Virus record (IMG/VR): IMGVR_UViG_3300017963_000190
Coordinates: 1-64,000 of that record
Direction: 5' to 3' (one strand)
Length of the DNA stretch: 64,000 nt
A program made the translations under genes and the position numbers. Every line of letters starts with the position of its first letter. Within the stretch, counting starts at the first letter, position 1. A model generated the notes under the pieces. That model worked only from the letters and a program-made list of their open reading frames with translations, ran no database searches and was not told where the DNA came from. Shown here piece after piece: positions 19,244 to 33,571 of the stretch.

Positions 19244-19350
19244 GGATCCCCTATGGATCCCCAAAATAGGCCCTTTTTGGCCATATATAGCCCTTTTACC
19301 CCCTATATAGGGGATCCATAGCGTGTTTGGGGCCTATTTGGGGATCAGAT
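19244..19350. repeat. nested inverted repeats / GGATCC cluster
   Basis: GATCCCCAAAATAGGCCC ... GGGCCTATTTGGGGATC; palindrome CCCCTATATAGGGG at 19300-19313. Confidence 0.75.
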
Positions 19351-19491
19351 CCCCTTTTATACCCCTAAAAAGGTCGGTGTTTAAGTGTGAAAATGGTGCT
19401 ACACTGTGCATATGGATCCCCAATGGAGTAGATCCGTGTACCGATACTGCACCGTTTGTGCGCAAGATTCATTCCATTCACTGGATCCCAT

Positions 19492-19571
19492 GTGACAGCA
19501 ATGTTACAGATGAGTGAATTGTGCGTAACATGGTTGTCACACTTGTAACCTAAGCGTCACACTCCTGTCAC
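19492..19571. repeat. helically phased GTNAC array
   Basis: GTNAC at 19492, 19503, 19525, 19536, 19545, 19556, 19567 and GTGAA at 19514. Confidence 0.6.
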
Positions 19572-20039
19572 ATTACACAACGAGTGAAGCACGACACAGG
19601 GAGTGAACCGTGTCAGTAACGTGTAGTGTACACTTACAGTGACCCCACACGCACACACGTATTACCTTGCAGGTCGCATGCCAACTAGGATCCCCTCGGA
19701 GGCTTCGTGTGCTGGCATGTGTGCGTGTCTATTCTTACACGCTTCACAGTTACCTCGGCTCCGGCCGGGCAGCTACGCCGGAGCCTGCGAGCTAGCAGCC
19801 ATGTGTCACGAACGGACACGGTGTGCGACAAGTAGATCTTGATATTCCTCATGCCCTCATGATACTGATGTGGAGTTACGTGTCAAATTCCGTGCACGTT
19901 CACATAAATTGCAATTAAATTCATTTCGGCTATTGACTCCGGAGCAATGATGGTAACGCGTGAGGGTTTAACCGTGTGCACGCAACGCGGAACGGATCCC
20001 CAATCATTAGGGATCCGTTCGCTGGGGATCGTGGCGGGA

Positions 20040-20339
20040 TTACTTGCGGATCAATTTGGGTGCTTGCACGTTGGTGAACCAACAATCGGGATCGTCGGGG
20101 TTGATCATGTGGCCGAAGTAACCATGGCCCCAGTAGGAATCATCCGCTTCCTGGGCCGTCATGAAAACGGTTTCGTCCGCGGCCTCGCACAGCGCGTCCA
20201 CACCCAGGCCACCGGCCTTCAAGAGCTCACGCACGCGACGCTTGTTGTGCGTGCGGCGTGCCTTGCGGCGCATGTAGCGCTGGTTGCCGTTGGTGTCGCT
20301 GTGACCGAGGCAGGGAGTCTTGCGGTACGAGCGGGCCAT
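20040..20339 (-). CDS. small basic protein
   Basis: start MARSYRKTP behind CCGGAGG. Confidence 0.8.
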   Translation of the reverse strand: MARSYRKTPCLGHSDTNGNQRYMRRKARRTHNKRRVRELLKAGGLGVDALCEAADETVFMTAQEADDSYWGHGYFGHMINPDDPDCWFTNVQAPKLIRK

Positions 20340-20560
20340 TTTATCCTCCGGGGGCGGGGTGGTTAGTATCTCCGCCCGTAGATATAAGGTAAGCATCATT
20401 GATACGTTGTCAATATGTGTGCACGAAAAAGAAAAAGAAATTAAATGCGCTTTGCCTATTGCCTTTTCGGGAAAGATGGTAACGCGTGAGGGTTTAACCC
20501 TGTGCACGTGCACGAAAAAGCCCCGAGCGTTTCCACCCGGGGCTTGCAGGAATCTCGGGG

Positions 20561-20845
20561 CTAGAAGGGGATGCCGTCCCACTTGTCCTTTTCGTACGCG
20601 TCTACGTGCGCGTCATACTCCGTGGTCTCGTAATAATACTTGGTGGCGACGTGAGCATCCTGTTCCAGCCACGCCTCTGAGAAGGCATCCACGGCGGCCT
20701 CGTAAGCCAGGGCATGCGGGCAGTCGAGGTCGTTATGGCGGAAGACGCTAGGGAACCACGCGTTATCTTCATAACACGTGCACGCGTTGTTAAGCGCGTC
20801 TAACTCAGCATCCAGCTTGGCGTTGGCGATTGCATAAGCCGTCAT
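20561..20845 (-). CDS. hypothetical protein
   Basis: CCGGAGGTAA RBS, own promoter and terminator. Confidence 0.8.
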   Translation of the reverse strand: MTAYAIANAKLDAELDALNNACTCYEDNAWFPSVFRHNDLDCPHALAYEAAVDAFSEAWLEQDAHVATKYYYETTEYDAHVDAYEKDKWDGIPF

Positions 20846-21022
20846 CTTGTTACCTCCGGTGGTTTGTGGTATCGTGGCCATGACTAGAACATAAGTCGCC
20901 TTGTTACGATGTCAAGCGCTTCGCAGAAACAAAGAAAAATAATTTTGTGGGTTGACCACAGCGATTTAATGGTAACGCGTGAGGGTTTAACCCTGCCCCT
21001 TAGGGGCGCTTGGCCCCCGGGC

Positions 21023-21217
21023 TTACTCGCCGATATCCAGCATGCCCATGATCATGGCTTGCTCGGCGCCGAGCACGTTGCTACCGCCGCACGAAGGGCA
21101 ATCGTACCCTTCCGCGTCGGGCTCCGTTCCATCGCGCGTGAACTCCGCGCAGTCGGGACAGAAGCCCACATAGTTATAGGTTGCTTCGCGATACTCGATT
21201 TCACTTACTTGCGTCAT
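21023..21217 (-). CDS. small Zn-ribbon protein
   Basis: GFCPDC..EPDAEGYDCPSCG. Confidence 0.8.
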   Translation of the reverse strand: MTQVSEIEYREATYNYVGFCPDCAEFTRDGTEPDAEGYDCPSCGGSNVLGAEQAMIMGMLDIGE

Positions 21218-21227
21218 GGCTTTCCTC

Positions 21228-21668
21228 CTAAAGGGCACCAAGGGTTGCCAGGGATACGTAGTTGCCTCCCTGGGCTGTGATGATATGGTCTAGCACGGGA
21301 ACCCCGAGGAGATCCCCGCATTGCTTCAGACGCGCAGTGAGCTCGATATCATCCCTGCTAGGGGCCGTGTCCCCACTGGGATGGTTGTGCGCGAGGATAA
21401 CGGCGGCGGCCCCAGCGATGACCGCCCCACGGAATACTTCGCGGGGATGTATCTCGACACTGCCCAGCGAGCCCATAGCCACCGTTTGAACGGCCAGGCA
21501 TTGGTGCTTGGTATTGAGATACATCACAACGAAAGTCTCTTGAGCCCGGCTGTGAAGGCCGTAGGCGTCAAGTATTTCGTTGGCGTGCTCTGCCGTACTG
21601 ATCTTGCGCTGGGCATCAATCCTGCGCCCAGTGTAGGTCACTTCCGCTTCTCTTAGAATCATGCCCAT
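21228..21668 (-). CDS. radC: RadC-like JAB domain protein
   Basis: E..V.YLNTK, HPREVF, AHNHPSGD..PS..D, VLDHII. Confidence 0.92.
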   Translation of the reverse strand: MGMILREAEVTYTGRRIDAQRKISTAEHANEILDAYGLHSRAQETFVVMYLNTKHQCLAVQTVAMGSLGSVEIHPREVFRGAVIAGAAAVILAHNHPSGDTAPSRDDIELTARLKQCGDLLGVPVLDHIITAQGGNYVSLATLGAL

Positions 21669-21847
21669 GGTCTTACCTCCGGTAGCATCTAAGATAAGCA
21701 CTATTGACAGCGTAACAAGGGCAAAAGAAAATAAAACTATTTACACTTTGGGGGTTGCGCAAAGTGAAAAGATGGTAACGCGTGAGGGTTTAACCCTGCC
21801 CAGCTACGGAAACGGCGGATCCCCGTTTGGAGATCCGCCTGATGGAT

Positions 21848-23227
21848 CTAGTCCATCAGCCAATCGGTGCCGGCCATCTCAGCCATGATCCCAAAGACGT
21901 CTTCCCACATGGTCTCCTCAGCCGACCGGTGGGAAAGGGATCCATCGCGCCCCTTGTCGTGGGCCAACTCGTGGATCATGGTCCCGAGCAACCGTTGCAG
22001 CTTGCCCGTCACCTGGCGATTGATCCGGATCTCTTTGCTCCCGTGAGAGTAGGTCCCGAGGGGGGCGTCGGGTGCCGTGAATCCGAAACACCGAATCCCA
22101 TCCAGGCGATCCCTATCGGCGACGTCGGCCAGATCCAGGAGATTGATCGCCTTGTTCCAGTTGACGCGTTCCTGGGGATCCAGGTCGGCGACGGCCACGT
22201 AGTCTCCGCTGGAATCGATCGCCTTGTTTAGGATCTCCTCGATCGTCCCGAATTTGTTGGCCAGGACCTTGCCCATGCCGTCGGGAACCACGATACCCTG
22301 CAGACCGTAGAAGGACACCTTGGTGGCTTCGTCTTCGTTGGCCACCGGCACAGCCTTGTCACCGTAGGTATCGGCGAAGGTTGCGGAGATCTGCTCACCC
22401 ACTTCCTTATTAGAGTAGCGGCAGCAACCGGCCAGACGCTTCACGTCGGGCATGTCGGATTCGAGCATACCCCAGACATTGGAGATCCAGTCTTCGTCTT
22501 CGTTGTGCGCGCAAAGGGACGTCCAGAGTTGGGCCGCGGCATAGCCGAGATCATAGTCGTCGACCATGCGGCGATCCCGATCCAGATCCAACCCACTGGC
22601 GAAATCGTAGCCCACCGCCAGCTCGGGTTTGGTGCAGACGTAGATCCCTTTGCAGTAGATGCGCCCCTTCATGTTCTGGCCAAACAGGATGGATCCCGAG
22701 TAGCCAACGCGCTGGATCTCGTGATCGGGGATCTCGATGCACCGCAGGAAACGATCCTTGTAGTCGTTCCACTGCCGTTTGGAGATCTTGATCCGCACAG
22801 TGAAATCGGACGTCGGGCGATCCCCGTAGTAATCCTGGCGACGCTTGCGCACCTTGACAGCCAGGACATCCACGCCAGCGTAATTCTTGGACGCTTCAAT
22901 GGCCGGTGTCCAGATCTCATCCCCATTCAGGAATTTGACTTCGATCCCCTGGCGCAGTAGGGCCAGCACACCCACCTTGAGACCATCGCCATGCTGGCCA
23001 CGCAAGGCGTCGTTGTCGCGCTTGGTTGACTTCCCGAGCAACCACACAGACGTGTCCAGGACACAGTCTCTGTTGGTCACTTCAAGCCATCCGTTGTCGT
23101 GGTTGTAATACGCGGGGTAGCCTTCGTCATGGCTATCCAGGGCATTTTGCATGACTTCCCGCAGTCCTTCCCATACGCTCCAATCGGGGGCGTATTCTGC
23201 GGTGATACTGAGCTCGAAACGTGCCAT
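21848..23227 (-). CDS. GHKL/HATPase-like ATPase with C-terminal HExxH metallopeptidase-like motif
   Basis: LREVMQNALD, GQHGDGLKVG; IHELAH; start moved to MARFEL because the ORF-track start runs through the promoter. Confidence 0.75.
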   Translation of the reverse strand: MARFELSITAEYAPDWSVWEGLREVMQNALDSHDEGYPAYYNHDNGWLEVTNRDCVLDTSVWLLGKSTKRDNDALRGQHGDGLKVGVLALLRQGIEVKFLNGDEIWTPAIEASKNYAGVDVLAVKVRKRRQDYYGDRPTSDFTVRIKISKRQWNDYKDRFLRCIEIPDHEIQRVGYSGSILFGQNMKGRIYCKGIYVCTKPELAVGYDFASGLDLDRDRRMVDDYDLGYAAAQLWTSLCAHNEDEDWISNVWGMLESDMPDVKRLAGCCRYSNKEVGEQISATFADTYGDKAVPVANEDEATKVSFYGLQGIVVPDGMGKVLANKFGTIEEILNKAIDSSGDYVAVADLDPQERVNWNKAINLLDLADVADRDRLDGIRCFGFTAPDAPLGTYSHGSKEIRINRQVTGKLQRLLGTMIHELAHDKGRDGSLSHRSAEETMWEDVFGIMAEMAGTDWLMD

Positions 23228-23451
23228 GTTTTGTCTCCGGTTTGTTGGTTCTCGGTCCGTGCAAATAAGATAAGCACTATTGACAGCGACACAAGGACCA
23301 CTTTGCATTTTCTCAATCTTTTTTCGGCACGGAGTTTGCAACGCGCGCACCTTATATACTGGCAGGGTTAAACCCTCACGCGTTACCATCATATTGACGA
23401 TGTCAAGTATTACAGGCAAGAAAAGCGATTTTTCTTTTTTCGCACAAAAGC

Positions 23452-23479
23452 TTGACTCTGAAACAAGGCTGCTTATATT
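23452..23479 (+). promoter_or_regulatory. plus-strand promoter of the inverted cassette
   Basis: TTGACT-N16-TATATT; RBS CCGGAGGTAA at 23511-23520. Confidence 0.75.
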
Positions 23480-23525
23480 CTATGTACGGCGCCGCAAGTT
23501 AGGGGCCGCACCGGAGGTAAAAGTG

Positions 23526-23561
23526 ATGCGAGATTGGATGTGGACCTGGCTAGGTCGGTAA
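23526..23561 (+). CDS. 11-aa Trp-rich mini-ORF MRDWMWTWLGR
   Basis: consensus phage promoter and RBS directly upstream. Confidence 0.5.
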   Translation: MRDWMWTWLGR

Positions 23562-23858
23562 ACTGGCTCACGGTGTTTACGCTAGGGCAGCGGCCACCGT
23601 GCTACTTAACCGGCAGCGTAGGGATCCAACGCGTAAAGGGATCCCGCGGTACCAGCGCTGAGACCGGCAACGTCAAAGCCCCCAACCTATTAACGCCAGG
23701 ACGCTAGCCACCTGGAGCATTCCGCTCCCGTTTCCCTTTAGGGGTGTAGGTTAAACCCTCACGCGTTACCACGAAAATTACGTTGTCAAGTATTACAGGC
23801 AAAAATAAAGGGCGCCCTTTCAGACGCCCTCAAATGCCCCGTGTTAGGAGCAAGGGTG

Positions 23859-24218
23859 CTAGGCACCCATGAGCCGTTCATAGTAAGCCTCGCGCTCCCA
23901 GGCCGCTTGCTCCCGCTCCTGGGCCACGATTTGATCGTGCAGCTTGGGGTCCTGGTTTTTCAGCGCGGACCAGTCGATACAGTGGACCTTGCCCGTGCCC
24001 TTGCAATGGGGACACGCGCGATCATAGCGACCGGCCATGTAGTCCTCCTGGAAATCGGGATCTTCCTGGGCCCACTCGCTAGCGGTCCAGGAGCCCATGT
24101 GCGCGGACGTGCGCCCGTCCCCTTCGCAGTCGTCACAGATGCGCCACTTACCAGGCAGCGTCACCTCGTAGCTGTCCCCGTCTTCGTCATAGACCGTGTA
24201 TTCGATATCCTTGGGCAT
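23859..24218 (-). CDS. DnaJ-type Zn-finger (CxxCxGxG) protein
   Basis: CDDCEGDG, CPHCKGTG. Confidence 0.75.
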   Translation of the reverse strand: MPKDIEYTVYDEDGDSYEVTLPGKWRICDDCEGDGRTSAHMGSWTASEWAQEDPDFQEDYMAGRYDRACPHCKGTGKVHCIDWSALKNQDPKLHDQIVAQEREQAAWEREAYYERLMGA

Positions 24219-24375
24219 GGTTTTTCTCCGGTGGTTGGGTTGTAGCCAGAATATAATCACTATTGACAGCGAAACAAGGGCAAAAGAAAAATAATTTTGT
24301 GGGTTGACTTCCGAGCTGGAATGGTAACGCGTGAGGGTTTAACCCTGGGAGAAGGCGGGCGCGTGCCCGCGTCTG

Positions 24376-24624
24376 CTATAGAACGCTCCACCTCCCTTTT
24401 TCGTAGAATTCGATCTCCGTGCACCCGAGCCCAGGCATCCCATAATCGTCCAAGGGCTCGAATTCCGTTTCGGGAGTGCAGACACCGGAGACGTAAACTG
24501 CGCCGTCGTCATCGCGCATACGGAAGCGCAGCGGGGCCGTGAGCCCTTCGCGCCAATTGCGGGATGCTACTCCCACACTATCCAGCGCACAGGCCATGTG
24601 CGCTTTGGTGATCTTCCAAGCCAT
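24376..24624 (-). CDS. hypothetical protein
   Basis: FRMRDDDG.VY..G..PLDDYG; GGAGGTAA RBS. Confidence 0.8.
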   Translation of the reverse strand: MAWKITKAHMACALDSVGVASRNWREGLTAPLRFRMRDDDGAVYVSGVCTPETEFEPLDDYGMPGLGCTEIEFYEKGRWSVL

Positions 24625-24636
24625 GGCATTACCTCC

Positions 24637-24921
24637 CTAGCAAAGGTCCTGGTTTAGTGCGATGCGCACGTCGCGCGCCACCTTCCGCTTCAAACGGGTA
24701 GCCGACAGGTTGTCTGCCACCCATCCCCACTCACGCACCGTATTCGCAGCCGCGTCCACCCACGCCTTGTGAGCAGGGATGCAACCGGTGGCAATGAAGA
24801 TCTCCGCCGCGGGTCGGCAGACAGCGCAAAGCTGCGCCCCTGACACGTTAAACCGCGTACGGGCGATCTCCGCCCACTGCCGCCACTCGGAACGTGCTTT
24901 GGTGATCTCGGTCGTGGTCAT
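24637..24921 (-). CDS. hypothetical protein
   Basis: CCGGAG RBS, structured leader. Confidence 0.75.
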   Translation of the reverse strand: MTTTEITKARSEWRQWAEIARTRFNVSGAQLCAVCRPAAEIFIATGCIPAHKAWVDAAANTVREWGWVADNLSATRLKRKVARDVRIALNQDLC

Positions 24922-25143
24922 GGTACTATCTCCGGTTTGATTTTGGGCGCACCTATCCCCCCAAAGGGGCTAAGGTGCGAGCCGGGAGTATTTCTCCCGC
25001 CGTAGGTAAAATATAAGTCGCCTTGTTACGAAGTCAATATAAAAAGAAAAATAATTTTGTGGGTTGCCTTTTCTCGAATCGTGGTAACGCGTGAGGGTTT
25101 AACCTATGCTCGTAGGGGATCCGAGTTGGATCCCATCTTTGGT

Positions 25144-25314
25144 TCACAGATAGAAGCGATACTCGATTGTGGGTTGGAACGATGCCCCTTTGTGGCGCAC
25201 CCTGCGTCCGTAGGAGCATTCCACTCGGCGGACTAGATCAGCGAGATCCGCATCACTGTAGAAAACCTCGCGCATCTTCCCTTGCACGAATACTCTGATC
25301 CTAATCTTGCACAT
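25144..25314 (-). CDS. small hypothetical protein (not in ORF track)
   Basis: 56 aa MCKIRIRV..; AGGAG RBS. Confidence 0.6.
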   Translation of the reverse strand: MCKIRIRVFVQGKMREVFYSDADLADLVRRVECSYGRRVRHKGASFQPTIEYRFYL

Positions 25315-25322
25315 TGGATCTC

Positions 25323-25562
25323 CTAACGGGGGTTGATCCCCATCCGATGGTTGAGATTATCCACGCGGGATTCGAGGATCCCCAGGAATACCTCTGCCGC
25401 TTCACTGTCCGCACGGTAGCCAGCTTGGCACAGCGCAGCAATGGCAGCGGATTCGTCAAGCACGGCCACGGAGTAACCGTACAACTCTTTGACTAGGGGA
25501 TCCGATACCACTGGCAAGGGCATCGTTTCCGCGAGTCGCTCTGCTTTGGGGTAGGTCGTCAT
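25323..25562 (-). CDS. hypothetical protein, probably leaderless
   Basis: ATG lies about 6 nt after the -10 box. Confidence 0.7.
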   Translation of the reverse strand: MTTYPKAERLAETMPLPVVSDPLVKELYGYSVAVLDESAAIAALCQAGYRADSEAAEVFLGILESRVDNLNHRMGINPR

Positions 25563-25709
25563 GCGTATAAGATAAGTCGCGTTGATACAATGTCAATAGA
25601 TGTAAGAAAAATAATTTTGTCTGTTGACTTTCCCGCAGCCGTTGCTACGCGTGAGGGTTTAACCGTACCTGGTAGGACGCACGCCCCCGGTTTCCCAGGG
25701 GCTACGCTG

Positions 25710-26366
25710 CTAAACAGCGCTGCGATTGATGTAATAGACGTCGTAACCGTAGTTGCGCCGTTCGTCCGCATCATTGCGCACGCCTTTACCCTGGCACCGG
25801 AAGCAAATCCCACCGGGGCCTGTGGGCTTCCCGTTCAACATGCCCGTAGTGAACGCACCCGAGCCCGCACAGCGGCGACAAGTGAAGGTCACGTTACGCG
25901 CGGCCCACACCCACTGCTTAGCCGTAGGCTCGGTCACGCCCTTGGTGCCCAGGAGATCGCGACAAGCGGCCTGGAACGCCTTTTTACTCGGCGCGTGGCT
26001 CCGGCCCTGCACTAGCGCGAACTCCCGCCGCAGGTCATCTGTGGACATCTCAGACAATTTTTTCTGCGGCTTCGCTTTGCGACGCGGGGCGGCCTCAGGC
26101 ATGGGCACGCGGTAGCCTTCGCGCTGCATATCACGCGCCGTTTCCCGCGCGTCCGCAAGCTCAGGCCCCAACTCGCGACGCTCGCGCGAGTAGACGTAAC
26201 CCTCGTGACACCCTTTCCAGTATTCAGCGTCCGCGGCAGCATCGCCCGAGGGCTTGCAATTCGCGTGATACTCGCGACCGTCGATCTTGACGACCTCGGG
26301 CGTACGCACGCCATGGTTAAAGGGCACCTTACATCCGTTGCAGTATCCTTCGCGATCGTTGGCCAT
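25710..26366 (-). CDS. Zn-finger protein (CxxCxGxG)
   Basis: CRRCAGSG..CFRCQGKG; start MANDRE. Confidence 0.8.
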   Translation of the reverse strand: MANDREGYCNGCKVPFNHGVRTPEVVKIDGREYHANCKPSGDAAADAEYWKGCHEGYVYSRERRELGPELADARETARDMQREGYRVPMPEAAPRRKAKPQKKLSEMSTDDLRREFALVQGRSHAPSKKAFQAACRDLLGTKGVTEPTAKQWVWAARNVTFTCRRCAGSGAFTTGMLNGKPTGPGGICFRCQGKGVRNDADERRNYGYDVYYINRSAV

Positions 26367-26551
26367 TTTCTTACCTCCGGTTGGTTGCCCGTAAAAGATA
26401 AGTCGCCTTGTTACGATGTCAAGCATTTTTCTTGCGGGCATCGCACGCGCGCCACCGCACAGCCCATGGTTAAACCTTCGCGCGTTACCACGAAAGCCCC
26501 CGCGTCAAGGGGATCCGTGGCGTTTTTCTGTTTTTATTTCGGATCCCCTTT

Positions 26552-26692
26552 TCAGATCCGAGACGCTGCAAAAATGGTTCCTCCCATGAAAGCCAGGAAA
26601 CGGATCCCATTTCCTGTGTGAGTCCACAAGTAGACCGCGCAGAATACCAGCGCAATCGCGAGCACAAGACGGACAACCCTATTGGTACGCAT
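26552..26692 (-). CDS. small membrane protein
   Basis: two TM segments. Confidence 0.6.
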   Translation of the reverse strand: MRTNRVVRLVLAIALVFCAVYLWTHTGNGIRFLAFMGGTIFAASRI

Positions 26693-26855
26693 GACGTTTG
26701 CCTCCGAGGATGCGCGCGGCCAAGTAGCCATTGAAAGCCACGAAGCCAACGACCCGATACCATGCCTGCACCGGATTGGAGATCCAGACGCAAAGCACAA
26801 CGACGATCAGAACGATCAGCCAAATGGCGATCAGCTTTTTGATCCACTCCCACAT
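26679..26855 (-). CDS. small membrane protein
   Basis: MWEWIKKLIAIW.. Confidence 0.65.
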   Translation of the reverse strand: MWEWIKKLIAIWLIVLIVVVLCVWISNPVQAWYRVVGFVAFNGYLAARILGGKRHAYQ

Positions 26856-26862
26856 GACGGAT

Positions 26863-27177
26863 CTACTCCCCAATGGATCCGCTAGCGGTGGCGAAGTCGG
26901 GCACCGTCGGATCCGCAAGGTCCACCGAATAGATCCCACCCATCAAATGGTGCGCGTAGGCTTTGGAGATCGGCCGGAGGATATCCTCTGCCTCCCAGCG
27001 TCCGATCTCTTCGTGATACCAGCGACCACTAGTGGAGCACAGCAGGGTGGACCCGTCACCCAAGGGGACGATAAAATCCACCGTGATCAACTCGCGGGGA
27101 TCCGTGGCGGACATGGGCGCTCCTGTCGGGATCAACTCAAGGGATCCGATGATTTCTTGCTCTGTCTGTAACATCAT
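26863..27177 (-). CDS. hypothetical protein
   Basis: GAGGTG RBS. Confidence 0.7.
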   Translation of the reverse strand: MMLQTEQEIIGSLELIPTGAPMSATDPRELITVDFIVPLGDGSTLLCSTSGRWYHEEIGRWEAEDILRPISKAYAHHLMGGIYSVDLADPTVPDFATASGSIGE

Positions 27178-27180
27178 AAC

Positions 27181-27405
27181 TCACCTCGCAATGATGGCAA
27201 CCACGCGATCCGTTCTGTAAACCGCGCGGTTCCGGTCGGATGTCCAGGAGCTTTTGCCGTAGGTGTTACCGTCCAACGTGACAGCGCTGGGCAACGTACT
27301 GTAAGCCTGGTAGCTATCACAGTACGTTTCGAGATACTTCGCGCTCCTGTCGGGGAATTCCCCGTGGCAGGTGACTGTAACCGCGTTGAGTGCCTGAGCT
27401 TTCAT
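27181..27405 (-). CDS. hypothetical protein
   Basis: start MKAQAL behind GGAGG. Confidence 0.75.
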   Translation of the reverse strand: MKAQALNAVTVTCHGEFPDRSAKYLETYCDSYQAYSTLPSAVTLDGNTYGKSSWTSDRNRAVYRTDRVVAIIAR

Positions 27406-27627
27406 AGTGTGCCTCCGATGCATAGAATATAAGTCGCTTTGATACGGAGTCAATAGGGCAGTGTCAATTTTTACGCGGAAGAAAAATCGAGAAAACACAT
27501 TCGGCGGGGTTGACTTCCGCGCAGGGATGGTAACGCGTGAGGGTTAAACCCTGTCTGAAAATAAAAAGCGGACCGGTGGTTACCTCCAAGGCCACCGGTC
27601 CGAGTTATGTTGCATTGCCCGCGGTAA

Positions 27628-27945
27628 TTATCGCATCACGAGGGCAACGCGGGGAGTAGCGCGCACCCGAGAAGCACGGGCAGCCTTGCGCGCGTTTATA
27701 CGCGCCAGATCGGCCACCGCCTGCGCTCTGTTGTGCGCGTCCGCCTGCCGTGTCCACTGGACCGCGCAAGCGTCGCGCGAAGCCTGCGGGGCGCTGGCGA
27801 ACTCTGGGGAGCACATGAGCTTAACCACGTCCTCAGCCTGCGCGGGAGTGACGGCGCTCATGAGCGCCACCGCGACTTTGCTGCTGAGAAGCATGCTGAT
27901 CAGGAATTGAACGGCTACGTCGTGGGTGGTCGGGTTGGTTGTCAT
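27628..27945 (-). CDS. hypothetical protein
   Basis: start MTTNPT behind CCGGAGG. Confidence 0.75.
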   Translation of the reverse strand: MTTNPTTHDVAVQFLISMLLSSKVAVALMSAVTPAQAEDVVKLMCSPEFASAPQASRDACAVQWTRQADAHNRAQAVADLARINARKAARASRVRATPRVALVMR

Positions 27946-28175
27946 GGCTTTTCCTCCGGTTAGTAGCGGGGTGGTTTGTCTCCCGCTGTGAAACAAATAT
28001 AAGTCGCCCTGTTACGAAGTCAATATTTTCTCGCAAAATAATTTATTTTTCTTTTTCGCGCTTGCGGGGTTGACTTTCGCGCGGGAATGGTAACGCGTGA
28101 CGGTTTAACCCAGGGGACAAAAGGGCAAATGGGGGCACCGCGTAGGCGCTCCCATTTGCGTTGTGCTGGCCGTTT

Positions 28176-28466
28176 TTAGAACGCGTCCGGTTCATACCAC
28201 CGGCTGGCATCCTCGCGACACATGAGGCTATAGGTATTCCAGCGGTGCAGACGGGGCTTGCCCGAGCAGATCCGCACGTTGGACATGTCCGAGCGCCGCC
28301 GTGCGTTGGCCGCTACGGTCTCCGCTTCCCGGTGATCGTCGCAGGGAAGGATCACCCGGTTGTCTTTGCCTTCCGACTGGCCCCACCCCGACAGGAAGGT
28401 ATCAGTGGCGGTCACGTAGAATTTGGCCTTGGGGATCTCGCGCTGGCTTTCGATCATGGTTGACAT
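28176..28466 (-). CDS. hypothetical protein
   Basis: YVTATDTFLSGWG motif. Confidence 0.8.
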   Translation of the reverse strand: MSTMIESQREIPKAKFYVTATDTFLSGWGQSEGKDNRVILPCDDHREAETVAANARRRSDMSNVRICSGKPRLHRWNTYSLMCREDASRWYEPDAF

Positions 28467-28751
28467 TGGCTTTTCCTCCGGTTGCTGGTTTCTGTCCGCT
28501 GCTAGATAAAACATAAGTCGCCTTGTTACGAAGTCAATAGAACAGTGTCGATTTTTACGAACAAAAATAAATCACTTTTCTTGCGCAAAGGGGTTGACCG
28601 CGGCGAAAAGATGGTAACGCGTGAGGGTTAAACCCTAGGGGCGAGGAGAGGAGATCCCCCCGCGGATCCTAATCCTGTTAACTGGGGATCCGAAAGGGGA
28701 TCAAGAGGGGATCTGGCTAGGGATCTGCTTTTGTATAGAGACCTTTTCCTC

Positions 28752-29318
28752 CTATTCCTGGGCTTCTGTGGATCCGATAATCATGGGATCCGTTGGATCG
28801 GGTGCGCCCAGCTCGATTACCTCGAAACCAACGTGATCCTTAAAGGCTTCGTGGCGCGCGTGGTAGCGATCCACGGATTCGCGGGAGCATTCACACTTGC
28901 GCCGGGATCCCAAGCGGCCACAAGGGCAGCTGGGGGCGCCTGCGATAAGATAAAAGTCTGTGTGATCTTCCTTGTCCCCTGCCCGCAGGATCCGCTTGTT
29001 CACGAAACCGTGGCCCACCATTTCGAGCAAGGGCCGTCTGAACTCCGGCATATCGTCAAGGTACAACGTGCCCCCGTTGGCCAGGTGGACTTCGCCGGGG
29101 TATTTCTTGCTCCCCAGCATGCCCGGATTGCTCACGGTATGGTGAGGGGCGCGCAGTGGTCCACCCCTTAGCATGGCCAGCATACGGCCAAAGCGGAGCT
29201 TACCACAGCCCACAGGGCCAACTAGCAGGATAGGCTTGCCTGCGGCCATGGCATTAAGCGCGGCCGTGAGAACGCGCACAGAGACCTTGAGACCGTTGAT
29301 TGTGGTAGTAGGGGCCAT
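28752..29318 (-). CDS. Mg-chelatase-related (ComM/YifB-like) AAA+ ATPase fragment
   Basis: GPVGCGK, PLRAPHHT, PGEVHLANGGTLYLDD.PEF, CPCG. Confidence 0.85.
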   Translation of the reverse strand: MAPTTTINGLKVSVRVLTAALNAMAAGKPILLVGPVGCGKLRFGRMLAMLRGGPLRAPHHTVSNPGMLGSKKYPGEVHLANGGTLYLDDMPEFRRPLLEMVGHGFVNKRILRAGDKEDHTDFYLIAGAPSCPCGRLGSRRKCECSRESVDRYHARHEAFKDHVGFEVIELGAPDPTDPMIIGSTEAQE

Positions 29319-29653
29319 TGCTTTACCTCCGGGTTAGTGCGGGGTGGTTAGCTTCGCTGGGTTTCTCCCGCCGCAAACAAAACATAAGCACTATTGACAG
29401 CGAAACAAGGCGAAAAAGAAAAATAATTAAATGCGCTTTAGGGGTTGACCGCGGCGAAAAGATGGTAACGCGTGAGGGTTTAACCCTTGACGTCCCGCGG
29501 GGCGAGGGGGCGCGGCCGGATCCCCTGGGCCTAATCCTGGTAATCGGGTAGGGTTAACGGATCCCCTTTGGTGTTAGTCCTAGTATCTCATTTTGTATAG
29601 AGGGTGGATCCCCAATGGGGATCCAGGCAGGTTTTGTATAGAGGCCCTTTGGC

Positions 29654-29821
29654 CTATCGGGCAGCTGAGGGCATGATCACCAGGTCGTCGGGCAGGTGAT
29701 CCCCGTAGGGATCCATGAGACGGAGCGCTTGTTTCACCGCCTGGCGCTGTCGCTGCTTGAAACGTCGCCGGGCCTTACCCTTCCCGTTGCCATTGTACTC
29801 TTTTCGATTCGTGCGGGCCAT
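29654..29821 (-). CDS. small basic protein (not in ORF track)
   Basis: 55 aa MARTNRKEY..; CCGGAGGTAAG RBS; resembles 20040-20339. Confidence 0.7.
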   Translation of the reverse strand: MARTNRKEYNGNGKGKARRRFKQRQRQAVKQALRLMDPYGDHLPDDLVIMPSAAR

Positions 29822-29847
29822 TTTCTTACCTCCGGTTGGTTGTTTGG

Positions 29848-30033
29848 TTATTTACGGAGCCCTTCTAGCCATTCCCGATCCAGCTCGTCACGGGCCACGG
29901 CCATTTCCAGGAAATCCCGGAAAGCGTCCGGCGCACCTTGGTTGTCGATGTATTCCAGGGCCAGCGCTAGCGCATCCTCACAGGATAACCCATGGTATTC
30001 TGTGTATTGATCCATGATCATTTCGGCGCTCAT
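29848..30033 (-). CDS. hypothetical protein
   Basis: AAGGAG RBS. Confidence 0.7.
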   Translation of the reverse strand: MSAEMIMDQYTEYHGLSCEDALALALEYIDNQGAPDAFRDFLEMAVARDELDREWLEGLRK

Positions 30034-30038
30034 AGCCT

Positions 30039-30299
30039 TTACTCCTTATCCACCGTTAGTGCCAGCGCCACTTCGCGGCCGTAGCCGGTGAGCCGCATCT
30101 TGATCGGGCCAAAGCTGCCCTCTTTGCGGTGGGCCAGGCCGTTGTTCACCAGGAAATCCGCCTGGTACTCTGCCAGCTCGTGGTGCGAGTAGAAAAACGC
30201 GGGCTTGCACGCGCGCTCATACTCGCCCATTTCCCGCAGGACCTTTGCCGCCGCGGTATTGCAGATCTCGTTGGCCAGTTTCGTTGCTGCCTTGCTCAT
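30039..30299 (-). CDS. hypothetical protein (possible winged helix)
   Basis: LVNNGL..LTGYG. Confidence 0.75.
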   Translation of the reverse strand: MSKAATKLANEICNTAAAKVLREMGEYERACKPAFFYSHHELAEYQADFLVNNGLAHRKEGSFGPIKMRLTGYGREVALALTVDKE

Positions 30300-30360
30300 T
30301 TGCTTTGCCTCCGGTTGAACGTACCAAGAATATAATCACCCTTGATACGTTGTCAATGGG

Positions 30361-30735
30361 CTAGTAGGGCGTATTCTCGAAAACCTCGGGGCCGCCGTCC
30401 GAATCCAAGCTGATGGCCCCTGGAGCCACCGCCCGCGCCAGGGCGAGAATGGAGACCACGACGGCATCGTAGGGGCGATAGGCTGTCTTGCAGAACGAGA
30501 ATCCCGACCCCTCACGTTCCAGGCAGAACGTCTCGTAATCGTCATCCTCTGCCCCGTTGAGCCAGATCTTGTCTTTGGATACCTCCGGCTTGGATCCACT
30601 ATTGGCCAAGCCATCGGCCAGCTTGATCCTGTCATTCCCGGCGGCCTCGATGACATACTTGGCGCCGTCCATGATGCGCGTCCACTGCTTTTCGGTGAAA
30701 GGCTTGCTCTGTTCCCAGTAATGTGTGTAACCCAT
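30361..30735 (-). CDS. conserved phage protein (MGYTHYW family)
   Basis: MGYTHYW..FCKT..PYD..SDG. Confidence 0.8.
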   Translation of the reverse strand: MGYTHYWEQSKPFTEKQWTRIMDGAKYVIEAAGNDRIKLADGLANSGSKPEVSKDKIWLNGAEDDDYETFCLEREGSGFSFCKTAYRPYDAVVVSILALARAVAPGAISLDSDGGPEVFENTPY

Positions 30736-30900
30736 TTGCTTGTCTCCGGTTGGTTAGGGTTTCTTGCTTCGTGTGTAAAAGATAAGTCGCTTTGTTACGA
30801 TGTCAATATAGACAAGCGCAAAAAGAAAAACAAATAAAACGCACGCAGGAGGTTGACCGAGCTCGAAAGATGGTAACGCGTGAGGGTTAAACCTAGGTAG

Positions 30901-30996
30901 GAAAGTGAGCAGCCGAGCAAGCGACCTTCCCGGTATGCCCTAGGCTGTGCACCGCTAAGGGCTGCGTGGGGTCGGCGGATTGCTCGGTCTACTCTA
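30901..30996 (-). ncRNA. putative rod-like small RNA
   Basis: own promoter at 31003-31030, no ORF or RBS, terminal stem GAGTAGACCGAGCAA / TTGCTCGGCTGCTC. Confidence 0.55.
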
Positions 30997-31033
30997 ACCG
31001 TTATGATAAGCGGTTATTATACGTTGTCAAGTT

Positions 31034-31453
31034 TTACAGATACCCCAGGGCACGCCCCCACCGCTTCACACCGTGGTGCTCCGCCTTGGGAATGCAGTCG
31101 GCGATAGCTTCGGCGATGGCCATACCGCGATCCTGGGCGACCTTGACGCGCTCGTTATCGTACCCGTCGCTTTCCGCGTCCAAGTAGAACGTGGCGCTAA
31201 AGGGCATACACTGATGTTCACCCCGAGGGGAACACAGGAAAGCAGCCAGACGCCACGCGTAATAGATGAGCCCTTGACGGTTGCGCTTGTCCTTGGCCAC
31301 CTTGTAGGGCTGCTTAGGGCTGGACGCGCGCAGACGGCCCTTGTTCTTCCCACGGGATACCAAAGCCCCCTGGGCAATGAAGAAATCCTCGGCGCTCAGC
31401 TTGGCCCTGAGGGCTTCCACGTTGACCATTGGCATTTGACTGGTGAAATACAT
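31034..31453 (-). CDS. hypothetical protein
   Basis: CCGGAGGTAG RBS. Confidence 0.8.
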   Translation of the reverse strand: MYFTSQMPMVNVEALRAKLSAEDFFIAQGALVSRGKNKGRLRASSPKQPYKVAKDKRNRQGLIYYAWRLAAFLCSPRGEHQCMPFSATFYLDAESDGYDNERVKVAQDRGMAIAEAIADCIPKAEHHGVKRWGRALGYL

Positions 31454-31633
31454 CTGGCTACCTCCGGTTTAGCGGGGTTGGTTTAGTTTCTCCCGCTGTG
31501 AAAACAAATATAAGCACGCTTGATACGGTGTCAATATGGACAAGCGAAAAAGAAAAAAGAAATAAAGCGCACGATGCCCCTTGCCAAATTCGTTTTCGTG
31601 GTAACGCGTGAAGGTTAAACCCTACCCGCAGAC

Positions 31634-31706
31634 AAAAACGGACCGGCTAGCGTAACTGCCACGGGGCAAGGAATAGGACCCCGCTTGAAACCGCTAGCCG
31701 GTCCGT
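31634..31706 (-). terminator. intrinsic terminator with large structured loop
   Basis: 15-bp stem ACGGACCGGCTAGCG plus U-tract. Confidence 0.65.
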
Positions 31707-31715
31707 GCGCGCTTT

Positions 31716-31979
31716 TTAGAGCGCCTTGGCTGTGGCGCTTTCCAGCTCCACCAAGTCTGCCATGACGGCTTCCGAGTCGCCCCCGAAACCGGAGATGGTA
31801 ACCCAGCCACCCTTGCCCCGGAGCACCCAGCACCCGTTACGGGTTACCTCGGGCGTGCCCCCGTGGTATCTGTCATTGGGCCGCAAGAGGGCGTCGATCA
31901 GCTCCCGCTTGGCCTGGACCTTCACGGCCGTGTCCGAGATAACGGTGAATTTGACTTCGTTGGTTGTCGTGGTGGCCAT
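31716..31979 (-). CDS. hypothetical protein
   Basis: CCGGAGGTAAG RBS. Confidence 0.8.
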   Translation of the reverse strand: MATTTTNEVKFTVISDTAVKVQAKRELIDALLRPNDRYHGGTPEVTRNGCWVLRGKGGWVTISGFGGDSEAVMADLVELESATAKAL

Positions 31980-32165
31980 TGTCTTACCTCCGGCGGGGCT
32001 GGTTGGTTTATTTTCTCCCGCGTTAGATACAAGATAAACACTATTGACAACGTAACAAGGGGCAAAAGGAAGAAAATCGAAAATAGTTTTTACGAAAAAG
32101 TGACCTGTAAGACTTGACGCGATGGATTTAATGGTAACGCGTGAGGGTTTAACCCTTTATGGGGT

Positions 32166-32285
32166 GGGCTCGCGGGGTGCGCGGATCCCCTTCTACGGTG
32201 TTAGTCCTGTAAGAGCGTGGATTAGGGATCCGTTGGGGTGGATCTAGTAACGGATCCCCATTTTGTATAGAGCCGGGGTGGCCCT
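32166..32285. repeat. ~120-bp GGATCC-rich intergenic element, copy 1
   Basis: ends near-identical to 35005-35123. Confidence 0.8.
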
Positions 32286-32296
32286 AGTAGAGCGGA

Positions 32297-32944
32297 TTAA
32301 AGCTCCGACAAGGGGGGATCTTCGTCGGGGTTGTCCTTTTCCCACTGCTCGCGCGCCATTTGGGATCTATGTTGCGCCATGACGTGGTGCTCCCCCTTGG
32401 AGATCAGATAGCGACGCAGCCGTTCTGTCCTGCAATCCAAGCAATCGCAGTCAATCTCTTCCCATAAGCTGAATTCCTCACTGTAGCGATCCAGCTCCCC
32501 TTGTTCCAGCGTTAGGGAGTTGAGGGGGATTGAGGTATCAGCGTAATAGGCTGAGAAAAACAGGTATTGCTTCGTGACACACAGCCGGGGCATTTCGGTC
32601 CTGATGTTTTCGTCGCCAGTGCATGCTTCGGTGATGGCATTGTACAGTTTGGGATCCTCATCTTGATCTACAACGAAGGTCTCGTGCTCCAAGAGGGCAT
32701 CCATTAGACGCTCCGGGATACTACCGGCCATTGGGTGAAACCACATGGCCTCTGTGTCGACCAATTCGATCAGCTGGATCCCCGGCGCCGCTTCCTGGGC
32801 GCGCTCGAAAGCTCCCAGGGCTTCCTGCAATCGGTTGGCGATGATGGGATCCCAGCGGATCACACAGGCTAGGGGATCTGCAGCGTCGCCTTGACCCAGC
32901 TCGTTAGCGTAGATCACCAGGTACTTGTTCATAGTGGCGGTCAT
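32297..32944 (-). CDS. hypothetical protein (paralogue of 46723-47199)
   Basis: NKYLV.YA.ELG..PLACV..MP.L..T..SAYY. Confidence 0.8.
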   Translation of the reverse strand: MTATMNKYLVIYANELGQGDAADPLACVIRWDPIIANRLQEALGAFERAQEAAPGIQLIELVDTEAMWFHPMAGSIPERLMDALLEHETFVVDQDEDPKLYNAITEACTGDENIRTEMPRLCVTKQYLFFSAYYADTSIPLNSLTLEQGELDRYSEEFSLWEEIDCDCLDCRTERLRRYLISKGEHHVMAQHRSQMAREQWEKDNPDEDPPLSEL

Positions 32945-32954
32945 GGTTGATCTC

Positions 32955-33473
32955 CTAGGCGGCTTTGGCCGGTTTCCATTTCTTGGGGATGCGCCCCTCG
33001 AAAATCATTTTGTCCTGGGGCTTCGTGGTGAGCTTATCCCAGAGCTTGCGGTTTTCGGTAGTGTCCCCAGGGGTCTCGTAGGCTTCAACGGCGCCGTCGC
33101 GGATCACATAGGCATATGCAATATCCGCATTGATCCAGGGGTGGATACAGAATCCCAGAAAATCGTTGCCGTTGGTATCGAAGATCTGCTTAATGTAGGT
33201 GCTCTTGGGCATGCTTGGATTGTTCTCTTCGTAGGCCCGCTCTTTTTCCGCGTAGGCCAGGCGATCCTCTGCAGCTCTTTGCACCAGGAACACTAGCAGC
33301 TGGGCGGCGTAATGACCGATGTCAAAATAGCCGCGGCGCTCCCGATACAGCTTGGAGAACTCGGCGATCAGTGGCACCATTTCCTCAGGGTAGCCGTCGC
33401 TGTGGATGTACAGATACACAGGGGTATCCAAGGACATGGTCTCTTCAATGATGATGTTGGCTCGCGTACCCAT
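32955..33473 (-). CDS. conserved phage protein (HxDGYP family)
   Basis: MGTRANI..YIHSDGYP. Confidence 0.8.
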   Translation of the reverse strand: MGTRANIIIEETMSLDTPVYLYIHSDGYPEEMVPLIAEFSKLYRERRGYFDIGHYAAQLLVFLVQRAAEDRLAYAEKERAYEENNPSMPKSTYIKQIFDTNGNDFLGFCIHPWINADIAYAYVIRDGAVEAYETPGDTTENRKLWDKLTTKPQDKMIFEGRIPKKWKPAKAA

Positions 33474-33571
33474 GGCTTCTACCTCCGGTTGCTTGCGGGG
33501 TGGTTTGTGTCCCGCGTTAGATACAAGATAAGTCGCTTTGATACGCTGTCAAGTTTGACGCGCAACAAAAA

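What the first reader, a model, noticed from the sequence alone, without database searches (positions are those of the whole stretch)
19244..33000. Strong local GATC/GGATCC enrichment, even within coding sequence
Seen, by eye count: about 30 GATC in 21845-22946 and about 20 in 26511-27210, against about 8 in the first 1.1 kb of the window and about 4 per kb expected at random. Further clusters lie at 19244-19490, 28650-28990 and 32180-32920. Phages usually avoid palindromic restriction sites (established), so enrichment implies selection. Inference: Dam-type methylation or phosphorothioate targets, binding sites for a host or phage protein on the first-injected DNA, or decoy sites.
Basis: partly seen in the sequence, partly recalled or inferred. 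Interest (0 to 1): 0.6.

Follow-up and report, generated by a model that had tools for sequence, protein, structure and literature searches.

The report
Selected GGATCC/GATC arrays in phage early genes
In an uncultured 260-kb marine phage, a few early genes and spacers hold almost as many GATC sites (mostly GGATCC-type) as their protein sequences allow; the pattern is also present in distant relatives, so it is a selected DNA signal whose reader is unknown.

Summary

Coding GATC in 19-37.5 kb is 147, against 97.8 under synonymous-codon shuffles (z 7.9). The rest of the 260-kb genome sits at expectation.

The selected word is RGATCY, mostly GGATCC, not bare GATC. RGATCY scores z 11.4 and YGATCR z 0.9. 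Of 38 intergenic GATC sites, 33 are RGATCY.

The signal is specific to certain genes. A 459-aa GHKL-like ATPase gene uses 27 of its 35 codon-pair positions that can encode GATC, against 26% genome-wide. Its orthologues in five related metagenomic phages (41-60% identity) are equally saturated. Homologues at 25-36% identity in unrelated phages are not.

The phage encodes a Dam-family (D12) methyltransferase of unknown specificity. It has no SeqA, MutH, DpnII, BamHI or BglII homologue.

Best reading: a DNA signal acting on its own gene, read by a two-fold symmetric protein, probably linked to methylation, that controls selected early genes. The mechanism is inferred, not shown.

The parts
19244..19490 (.). 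Noncoding cluster of 8 GATC (5 GGATCC) inside a 1.35-kb gene-free stretch (18691-20039). It contains dyads such as GGGGATC-A-GATCCCC.
   Evidence: 11 of the 14 GATC in this intergenic stretch are RGATCY
19994..20106 (.). Six GATC starting just after the conserved intergenic element here called D1 (copy at 19952-19973). They include the pair GGATCCC...GGGATCC and run into the 3' end of gene 20040-20339(-).
   Evidence: 3 of 3 usable codon-pair positions carry GATC
21814..21842 (.). Hairpin-forming dyad GGCGGATC...GATCCGCC between D1 (21774-21795) and the stop codon of the GHKL-like gene. The GATC tract therefore extends past the coding sequence.
   Evidence: equivalent GATC-bearing hairpins in relatives
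21848..23227 (-). 459-aa GHKL-like ATPase gene with an HExxH motif near the C-terminus (PHROG 6077). It has 29 GATC (21/kb), and 27 of 35 usable codon-pair positions carry GATC.
23622..23645 (.). Intergenic pair of GGATCC sites 17 bp apart.
25116..25134 (.). Hairpin GGGATCC-GAGTT-GGATCCC, 12 nt after the D1 copy at 25083-25104.
26511..27210 (-). Cluster of 20 GATC: an intergenic pair (26511, 26541) plus three small minus-strand genes (26552-26692, 26679-26855, 26863-27177). The last gene uses 7 of 10 usable positions.
28176..28466 (-). 96-aa gene; 5 of 5 usable positions carry GATC.
28653..28990 (.). Intergenic array of 6 sites at 11-22-bp spacing (5 are RGATCY), running into the 3' part of the 188-aa YifB/Mg-chelatase-like AAA gene (28752-29318, minus strand; 8 GATC).
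29519..29710 (.). Intergenic array after D1 at 29464 (4 RGATCY, including GGATCCCC-AAT-GGGGATCC) and the start of gene 29654-29821(-).
32184..32944 (-). Intergenic array of 4 RGATCY sites after D1 at 32133, then the 215-aa gene 32297-32944 with 12 GATC (11 of 16 usable positions).
35023..35094 (.). Intergenic array homologous to the one at 32184, with 4 GATC (3 GGATCC).
36269..36865 (-). 198-aa gene (PHROG 6186) with 13 GATC (12 of 17 usable positions).
21774..21795 (+). One of about 23 copies of the D1 element (GGTAACGCGTGAGGGTTTAACC, preceded by TTGAC). This copy faces the 3' end of the GHKL-like gene. It is context for the arrays, not part of the GATC motif.

Best explanation
SHOWN. The region is the early-gene cassette array of a complete, uncultured 260-kb marine or sediment phage. 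Within it, the palindrome RGATCY (chiefly GGATCC, often GGATCCCC) is kept at very high density in a subset of genes and in a subset of intergenic spacers. In those genes, 70-100% of codon pairs that could spell GATC do so. Codon choice depends on context: GAT is used before C and ATC after G. The same gene is saturated in relatives whose synonymous sites are long randomised. The flanks are symmetric and show no strand bias.

INFERRED. The arrays are a DNA-level signal acting on its own gene, read by a two-fold symmetric sequence-specific protein. High site density, rather than any single site, is what is selected. The most economical candidate is the adenine-methylation route: the phage's own Dam-family methyltransferase marks the sites. 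The methylation state (full on injected DNA, half or absent after replication) or a protein that reads it would then block or permit transcription through these gene bodies. This would time or shut off selected early genes, including the phage sigma-factor gene in some relatives. A methylation-independent phage repressor or coating protein that recognises GGATCC is the close alternative within the same reading.
For: Selection:
- Coding GATC is 147 against 97.8 (synonymous shuffle, z 7.9) and against 74.9 (genome codon usage, z 10.3). This holds only in 19-37.5 kb; other genome blocks have z of about 1, apart from z 3.2 for 37.5-66 kb under the genome-codon model only.
- GATC is the top 4-mer under shuffles (z 12), and its synonymous competitors GATG, GATA, GACC and CATC are depleted.
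- The GHKL-like gene uses 27 of 35 usable positions against a genome background of 26%.
- Its orthologues in five relatives use 69-89%. The excess is about 2x over shuffles in four of them (P<0.001) and smaller in L012 (22 vs 17.5, P 0.025).
- Homologues at 25-36% identity in other phages are not enriched.

Six-bp symmetric motif:
- RGATCY 85 against 37 expected (z 11.4); one matching flank 75 against 48 (z 5.6); YGATCR 21 against 18 (z 0.9).
- 33 of 38 intergenic GATC are RGATCY, while ten standard spacers have none.
- GGATCT and AGATCC are equal on the sense strand, 17 and 21.

Regional, not intrinsic to the repeat: homologous intergenic elements inside the domain carry GGATCC, and copies at 39.9 and 49.8 kb carry none.

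Candidate writer: a 287-aa D12-class methyltransferase with DPPY (G000 82644-83507). Its K-x-x-GGK and G-x-L-x-R positions can be aligned to E. coli Dam (weak).

Precedent: GATC clusters inside E. coli coding sequences have been proposed to block transcription according to methylation state (PMC493266).
Against: - No methylation data exist for this DNA. Only assembled contigs are held.
- The methyltransferase scores far below the Dam equivalog cut-off (60 against 114.9 bits), so GATC specificity is unproven.
- Classical Dam, SeqA and MutH read the 4-bp core regardless of flanks, but here YGATCR is not enriched.
- Site spacing has no helical periodicity (P 0.26).
- The phage has no SeqA, MutH, DpnII, BamHI or BglII homologue.
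- The host is unknown; the only hint is ribonucleotide reductase at 39% identity to an uncultured gammaproteobacterium.
- Which genes are saturated differs between relatives, except the GHKL-like gene. No single regulatory logic is yet evident.
Confidence: 0.45

Rival explanations
1. RNA-level function. GGAUCC-type words are self-complementary, so many copies in a transcript give hairpins, terminator stems or RNA-RNA pairing (sense mRNA, or transcripts from the D1 element running antisense). These would control the stability or translation of selected early mRNAs.
For: Intergenic sites mostly come in pairs that can form hairpins, e.g. 25116-25134, 29606-29624, 19340-19354 and 21814-21842. The terminator-like hairpins of saturated genes in relatives also carry GATC in both arms. 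Seven clusters begin right after a promoter-like D1 element that faces into the gene.
Against: There is no conserved RNA fold in the intergenic elements (-7.7 kcal/mol, covariation term unfavourable). There is no wobble-type strand bias: GGAUCU and AGAUCC are about equal on the sense strand. Saturating nearly every usable codon pair over 1.1 kb is not what a defined RNA structure requires. The gene-free stretch at 19.2-19.5 kb has no evident transcript. No antisense reading frame is conserved.
Confidence: 0.12
2. Anti-defence sink or decoy. Dense sites titrate or mislead a host GATC/RGATCY-specific enzyme (restriction endonuclease, Dam, SeqA or another defence sensor) early in infection.
For: The arrays lie in the early, host-takeover type region with sigma-70-type promoters (35 sites against 11.1 expected). 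High copy number of sites is the selected property.
Against: A sink needs no particular gene, yet the same gene is saturated in all six phages while neighbours such as 34302-34817 (0 of 8 usable positions) and 21228-21668 (2 of 9) are untouched. About 190 sites are few beside a host chromosome. Sites for a cutting enzyme would be lethal unless they are modified.
Confidence: 0.08
3. No function. The pattern would be a by-product of amino-acid content, codon bias, horizontal origin from a GATC-rich donor, or a repair or mutation bias.
For: The domain is compositionally distinct (56-57% G+C against about 52%). Some sites come from Leu-Ile runs in small membrane proteins. B3 mycobacteriophages show genome-wide GATC excess, also unexplained (PMC4841201; Pipefish 12/kb, 58% of usable positions).
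Against: The excess survives shuffles that keep each gene's own amino acids and codons. It is maintained in orthologues at 41-60% protein identity and absent from their neighbours. A genome-wide repair bias cannot be gene-specific. Noncoding sites are almost all RGATCY.
Confidence: 0.07
4. Origin of replication or packaging signal. The GATC clusters would mark an oriC-like or P1 pac-like site embedded in genes.
For: oriC and P1 pac are the classic dense GATC clusters, and P1 pac lies inside a gene (textbook knowledge). The 1.35-kb gene-free stretch at 18.7-20.0 kb, with its dyads, could be an origin.
Against: There are about ten separate clusters over 18 kb, not one site. TGATCA-type words are not enriched (6 against 9.3). 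There is no GC-skew turning point here; skew follows gene orientation, with its minimum at 175 kb. The saturated genes are not terminase or replication genes.
Confidence: 0.06

Closest known systems
GATC clusters inside coding sequences of E. coli (the 'GATC regulated network' of Henaut 1996 and Riva 2004; PMC493266)
   Same: Dense GATC within gene bodies beyond codon expectation, conserved in a relative, and proposed to act on transcription through Dam methylation state or a reader such as SeqA.
   Different: Here the setting is a phage early region. The density is far higher (up to 28/kb, with 70-100% of usable positions used). The motif has an RGATCY footprint, and intergenic arrays accompany the genes. 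No Dam dependence is shown in either case.
GATC/GGATCC over-representation in subcluster B3 mycobacteriophages (PMC4841201)
   Same: A phage with roughly 4-fold excess of both GATC and GGATCC, noted as contrary to palindrome avoidance and left unexplained. In Pipefish, 58% of usable codon pairs carry GATC.
   Different: In B3 phages the excess is genome-wide and has no RGATCY bias (RGATCY 135, YGATCR 211 in Pipefish). Here it is confined to 18 kb and to particular genes, and the flanks matter.
oriC / SeqA sequestration sites and the P1 pac site (Dam-regulated GATC clusters)
   Same: Clusters of closely spaced GATC whose methylation state is read by a protein. P1 pac lies within a coding sequence (textbook knowledge).
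   Different: Those are single short sites (about 160-250 bp) with phased 4-bp cores or TGATCA hexamers. Here there are many clusters, one of them 1.1 kb long, with no phasing, no TGATCA excess and no SeqA gene.
Operator or heptad arrays bound cooperatively by small dimeric repressors (e.g. MetJ metboxes, omega repressor heptads)
   Same: Short palindromic or oriented words, repeated at close spacing in either orientation, and read by a symmetric protein (recalled knowledge: a lead, not a test).
   Different: Those arrays sit at promoters and are contiguous. Here the sites fill gene bodies and the spacers near terminators, and no binding protein is identified.

Membership tests
Dam/SeqA-type GATC cluster (oriC-like) | Recognition of the 4-bp GATC core irrespective of flanking bases | tested here: not met
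   Enrichment depends on the flanks: RGATCY z 11.4, one matching flank z 5.6, YGATCR z 0.9. CGATCG is 3 against 14.6 expected.
Dam/SeqA-type GATC cluster (oriC-like) | Sites phased on one face of the helix | tested here: not met
   No significant periodicity between 8 and 16 bp against a jitter null (maximum over periods P 0.26).
Dam/SeqA-type GATC cluster (oriC-like) | A GATC adenine methyltransferase acts on the DNA | tested here: inconclusive
   A D12-class methyltransferase is present (PF02086 50 bits), but TIGR00571 scores 60 against a 114.9 cut-off. Its specificity is unknown and no modification data exist.
Dam/SeqA-type GATC cluster (oriC-like) | A SeqA or MutH reader is present | tested here: not met
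   No SeqA in the phage. The weak MutH hit is a generic PD-(D/E)XK nuclease. Host proteins cannot be tested.
GATC clusters in coding sequences (E. coli network type) | GATC density within a coding sequence above what codon and amino-acid usage give | tested here: met
GATC clusters in coding sequences (E. coli network type) | The cluster is conserved in the orthologous gene of relatives | tested here: met
   Six of six orthologues carry 13-23 GATC/kb and use 69-89% of usable positions.
GATC clusters in coding sequences (E. coli network type) | Expression depends on Dam methylation | not testable with these tools
   No cultured phage or host, and no RNA runs hold the sequence.
P1 pac-type packaging site | Short site with TGATCA/G hexamers flanking a cleavage point within a terminase gene | tested here: not met
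   TGATCA is 6 against 9.3 expected. The clusters lie in non-terminase genes and span up to 1.1 kb.
B3-mycobacteriophage-type GATC/GGATCC excess | A genome-wide excess | tested here: not met
   Only 19-37.5 kb deviates. The rest of the genome is at 5-6/kb with z of about 1.
Repeat family, tRNA genes or known RNA as the source of the motif | GATC embedded in copies of a longer repeated unit or a structured RNA gene | tested here: not met
   No tRNA and no Rfam family. Coding sites are not repeats. Homologous intergenic elements outside the domain lack GATC. There is no conserved fold.
Restriction-site avoidance | Under-representation of the palindrome | tested here: not met
   The opposite holds. 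GGATCC is about 1.6-1.8x over the single-base expectation (about 69 for the whole genome, my own arithmetic base counts) even outside the domain, and about 9x within it.

The most novel reading that the evidence does not exclude
A gene-body epigenetic timer. A clade of large marine phages packs RGATCY sites into the bodies and terminators of chosen early genes (always the GHKL-like ATPase gene, and in some members the phage's own sigma-factor gene). The change from fully methylated injected DNA to hemi- or unmethylated replicated DNA, read by a symmetric binding protein, would then switch those genes off in step with replication. This would be gene-specific, density-coded regulation written at synonymous sites.
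Probability: 0.2. Interest if true: 0.8.

Novelty: new variant of a known kind. Interest (0 to 1): 0.62.

Why it matters
Short palindromes are normally avoided by phages. Here one is driven close to the maximum the protein sequence allows, in particular genes, and held there across deep divergence. That is direct evidence of a second code at synonymous sites in a phage. It gives a concrete, testable case (recode the gene, test the methyltransferase) for the long-standing and unproven idea that GATC clusters inside genes regulate them. It may also help explain the unexplained GATC/GGATCC excess of B3 mycobacteriophages. Synonymous recoding of such genes, and annotation that ignores DNA-level signals, could disturb a functional signal.

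Tried and rejected
- tRNA array or known RNA as the source: none found.
- Near-identical phages or element copies: none by megablast, protein patterns or the D1 pattern in viral contigs.
- Host-derived gene fragment. The 188-aa Mg-chelatase-like gene looked like a captured piece, but it has no close bacterial relative and is a conserved gene of this phage clade.
- Antisense overlapping gene as the cause of synonymous constraint: the codon-complementary frame has 0-7 stops at non-conserved places.
- Position-specific conservation beyond density. With 70-89% saturation, shared sites are no more than expected in most pairs. Density, not individual sites, is what can be shown.
- Helical phasing of sites: not significant.
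- Origin of replication from GC skew: no turning point here.
- MutH-like nuclease: the weak hit is a Cas4-like PD-(D/E)XK protein.
- Conserved RNA structure in the intergenic arrays: none.
- Host identification: only 30-39% identity of ribonucleotide reductase to uncultured Gammaproteobacteria and Woeseiaceae bins, too weak to use.
- Read-level evidence: only assembled contigs of two metagenomes hold the sequence and no RNA run does.
- Phosphorothioation genes were not searched.


Full report
**1. The observation**

- 30 GATC in 21845-22946
- 20 in 26511-27210
- 8 in 19244-19490
- 13 in 28650-28990
- 16 in 32180-32920
- 8 in the first 1.1 kb

The window is bases 1-64000 of a 260,067-bp viral contig. 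That contig averages 5.5 GATC/kb. Against this rate the five clusters have Poisson tails from 3.6e-12 to 8.9e-5. Forty-nine of the window's 59 GGATCC copies lie between 19.2 and 37.0 kb. The stretch is identical in three assemblies from two studies. One of those assemblies is 260,075 bp long and starts elsewhere in the sequence. The genome is therefore complete and assembles as a circle, so no physical ends are known.

**2. The setting**

Bases 19.9-66 kb are an array of small minus-strand genes. Each has a sigma-70-type promoter (TTGACA, 16 nt, TATNTT) and a GGAGG ribosome-binding site. The promoter scan finds 35 sites in 19-38.5 kb against 11.1 +/- 3.7 in shuffles.

Between genes sits a second conserved element, here called D1. 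Its core is GGTAACGCGTGAGGGTTTAACC, preceded by TTGAC. About 23 copies occur, all between 19.9 and 49.8 kb and nearly all on the strand opposite the genes.

There are no tRNA genes, no Rfam families and no close cultured relative. The phage carries its own sigma-70-family factor at 40287-41177. The runs that hold the sequence are sediment and seawater metagenomes, kept only as contigs.

**3. The enrichment is more than codon usage**

I shuffled synonymous codons within each of 343 open reading frames of the genome.

| Genome block | Observed coding GATC | Expected, synonymous shuffle | Expected, genome codon usage on the same proteins |
|---|---|---|---|
| 19-37.5 kb | 147 | 97.8 (z 7.9) | 74.9 (z 10.3) |
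| every other block | at expectation | z 0.9-1.8 | z -0.1 to 1.8, except z 3.2 for 37.5-66 kb |

The excess is concentrated in a few genes:
- 21848-23227: 29 GATC against 15.4 +/- 2.6 expected, reached in 0 of 2000 shuffles
- 32297-32944: 12 against 7.1
- 36269-36865: 13 against 7.8
- 26863-27177
- 28176-28466

A simpler measure makes the point. GATC can only be encoded at X-Ile (when X has a codon ending in G) or at Asp followed by Leu, Pro, His, Gln or Arg. Genome-wide, 26% of such positions carry GATC. In the domain the figure is 53%. In the genes above it is 69-100%. Some neighbouring genes are untouched, for example 34302-34817 (0 of 8) and 21228-21668 (2 of 9).

**4. The selected word is RGATCY**

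- Compared with the rest of the genome, the most enriched words are GATCC, GGATCC, GGATCCC and GATCCCC. GGATCCC occurs 45 times against 4.3 expected. Both orientations are equally common.
- I pooled the saturated genes and the orthologues and compared them with synonymous shuffles. RGATCY is 85 against 37 (z 11.4). Sites with one matching flank are 75 against 48 (z 5.6). YGATCR is 21 against 18 (z 0.9).
- Between genes, 33 of 38 GATC are RGATCY. They come in tight groups of 2-6 sites. Ten ordinary spacers have no GATC at all.
- GGATCT and AGATCC are equally frequent on the sense strand. This fits a symmetric duplex-DNA target.

**5. Relatives**

The 459-aa product of 21848-23227 is a GHKL-like ATPase with an HExxH motif (PHROG 6077). 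It has metagenomic homologues at 41-60% identity.

Five loci were fetched: L007, L010, L011, L012 and L013. At least four share gene order (a Mg-chelatase-like AAA gene, RadC, a sigma factor) and carry D1-like elements. L012 has no D1.

Findings in these relatives:
- The orthologue carries 13-23 GATC/kb in all five. The excess over synonymous shuffles is about two-fold in four of them (P<0.001) and smaller in L012 (22 against 17.5, P 0.025). They use 69-89% of usable positions.
- GATC is by far the most enriched 4-mer in the pooled orthologues (z 12). Its synonymous competitors GATG, GATA, GACC and CATC are the depleted ones.
- RGATCY makes up 35-48% of GATC in the relatives, against 25% expected.
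- In L007 and L010 the sigma-factor gene is also saturated (15 of 20 and 17 of 25), while its neighbours are at background. In the present phage the sigma gene is not saturated (5 of 11).
- Homologues at 25-36% identity in unrelated phages (QdP_Psa3, phiXF1, Vibrio phage 1.121.O, and loci L017 and L018) show no enrichment.

The trait therefore belongs to this phage clade, not to the protein family. It has been maintained by selection through divergence that randomises neutral synonymous sites. Because saturation is so high, I can show selection on density but not on individual sites.

**6. Regional, not intrinsic to a repeat**

Six intergenic elements of about 130 nt share their ends (D1 at one side, TTTTGTATAGAG at the other). 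The four copies inside the domain are studded with GGATCC. The two copies at 39.9 and 49.8 kb have no GATC at all. The elements have no conserved RNA fold. In saturated genes, here and in relatives, the GATC tract runs past the stop codon into the terminator-like hairpin and up to the facing D1 element.

**7. Candidate writers and readers**

- The genome encodes a 287-aa D12-class adenine methyltransferase with the DPPY motif, at G000 82644-83507. It scores PF02086 50 bits, and TIGR00571 60 bits against a cut-off of 114.9.
- Its alignment to E. coli Dam is weak. It does place a Lys in K-x-x-GGK and an Arg in G-x-L-x-R opposite residues that, from my recollection of the Dam structures, contact the GATC guanines. 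I treat this only as compatible with GATC specificity.
- A second, degenerate D12-like protein (DPPY replaced by DVPT) lies at G000 189366-190409, next to a RecA-like gene.
- No SeqA, DpnII, BamHI or BglII family member was found. For the last two, the control genomes did not respond either, so those negatives are weak. The weak MutH hit is a generic PD-(D/E)XK nuclease.

**8. Mechanism**

What is shown is a selected, symmetric, 6-bp DNA word kept at near-maximal density in chosen early transcription units and spacers.

What I infer, with confidence about 0.45, is a DNA signal acting on its own gene, read by a two-fold symmetric protein. Density is what matters, which points to cooperative coating or a bulk change of the duplex rather than a single operator. 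The methylation route uses a component the phage demonstrably has. It also matches the old proposal for GATC clusters in E. coli genes (PMC493266).

Against a textbook Dam/SeqA system stand the flank dependence and the lack of helical phasing. A methylation-independent GGATCC-binding phage protein therefore remains a close alternative within the same reading.

Rival explanations are less likely, for the reasons given under each: an RNA-level role for self-complementary GGAUCC, a decoy for a host enzyme, an origin or packaging site, and a neutral by-product.

**9. Comparison with what is known**

- The nearest published phage case is subcluster B3 mycobacteriophages. Their GATC and GGATCC are about four-fold over-represented genome-wide and unexplained (PMC4841201). 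I checked Pipefish: 12 GATC/kb throughout, 58% of usable positions filled, and no RGATCY bias. The present case is local, gene-specific and flank-dependent.
- It also differs from oriC, SeqA sites and P1 pac in number, length, phasing and flanks.

I rate it a new variant of a known kind.

**10. Limits**

- There is no cultured phage or host, no modification data and no transcript data.
- Gene models outside the ENA calls are my own ORF picks.
- The relatives are contig fragments, so I could not test whether saturation and the methyltransferase occur together.

Noticed in passing
window 19952-49812 (about 23 copies, e.g. 21774-21795, 29464-29485; reversed copies at 23366-23387, 23749-23770, 26468-26489, 41305-41326): Conserved intergenic element D1: TTGAC, about 15 nt, then TGGTAACGCGTGA(G/A)GG and a 9-nt palindrome. 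It lies almost always on the strand opposite the genes, back-to-back with each gene's sigma-70-type promoter. It is conserved in relatives, where the palindrome's third and seventh bases change together (GGTTAAACC, GGCTTAGCC, GGTACTACC). It could be a promoter for the phage sigma factor giving antisense RNA, a hairpin promoter, or a cassette-recombination site.
   Followed up: partly
window 28729-28740, 29591-29602, 32261-32272, 35099-35110, 40041-40052, 49919-49930 and others; L012 7038-7075: The motif TTTTGTATAGAG (CTCTATACAAAA on the gene strand) occurs 12 times on one strand between 28.7 and 66 kb, just after stop codons. It is also conserved in the most distant relative, L012, which lacks D1. 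Its function is unknown: possibly a promoter for a later transcription class or a processing site.
   Followed up: partly
window 18691-20039: A 1.35-kb gene-free stretch at the boundary between a 50-51% G+C block (1-19 kb) and the 56-57% G+C early array. It is rich in dyads (CCCCTATATAGGGG, GGGGATC-A-GATCCCC) and sits next to an HTH_17 DNA-binding protein gene (18232-18693). It may be a control region or an origin. GC skew gives no support for an origin.
   Followed up: partly
window 40287-41177 (-): The phage encodes a full sigma-70-family factor (regions 1.2, 2, 3 and 4). Its orthologues in relatives L007 and L010 are GATC-saturated, but this copy is not.
   Followed up: partly
G000 189366-190409 (+), outside the window (L002:1177-2220): A 347-aa protein with a weak D12 methyltransferase match (motif I only). 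The catalytic DPPY is replaced by DVPT. It lies next to a RecA-like gene. It may be an inactive methyltransferase paralogue that could act as a site reader.
   Followed up: partly
window 28752-29318 (-): A 188-aa protein matching only the central AAA part of YifB/ComM Mg-chelatase-like ATPases. It looks like a fragment but is a conserved gene of about 190-200 aa in four relatives.
   Followed up: yes
window 19000-37500: Other palindromes deviate in the same domain. By a Markov estimate, GTAC has observed/expected 0.54 and CATG 1.53. GGATCC is also about 1.6-1.8x over the single-base expectation in the rest of the genome.
   Followed up: no
window 35277-35399 and 35665-35787: A 123-nt direct repeat at 72% identity links the adjacent genes 35130-35531 and 35542-35928, indicating a tandem gene duplication.
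   Followed up: no
whole contig (G000) and L008: IMG/VR lists the record as linear and about 74% complete. An independent assembly of 260,075 bp carries the same sequence with a different start point, so the genome is most likely complete and circularly permuted or terminally redundant.
   Followed up: partly
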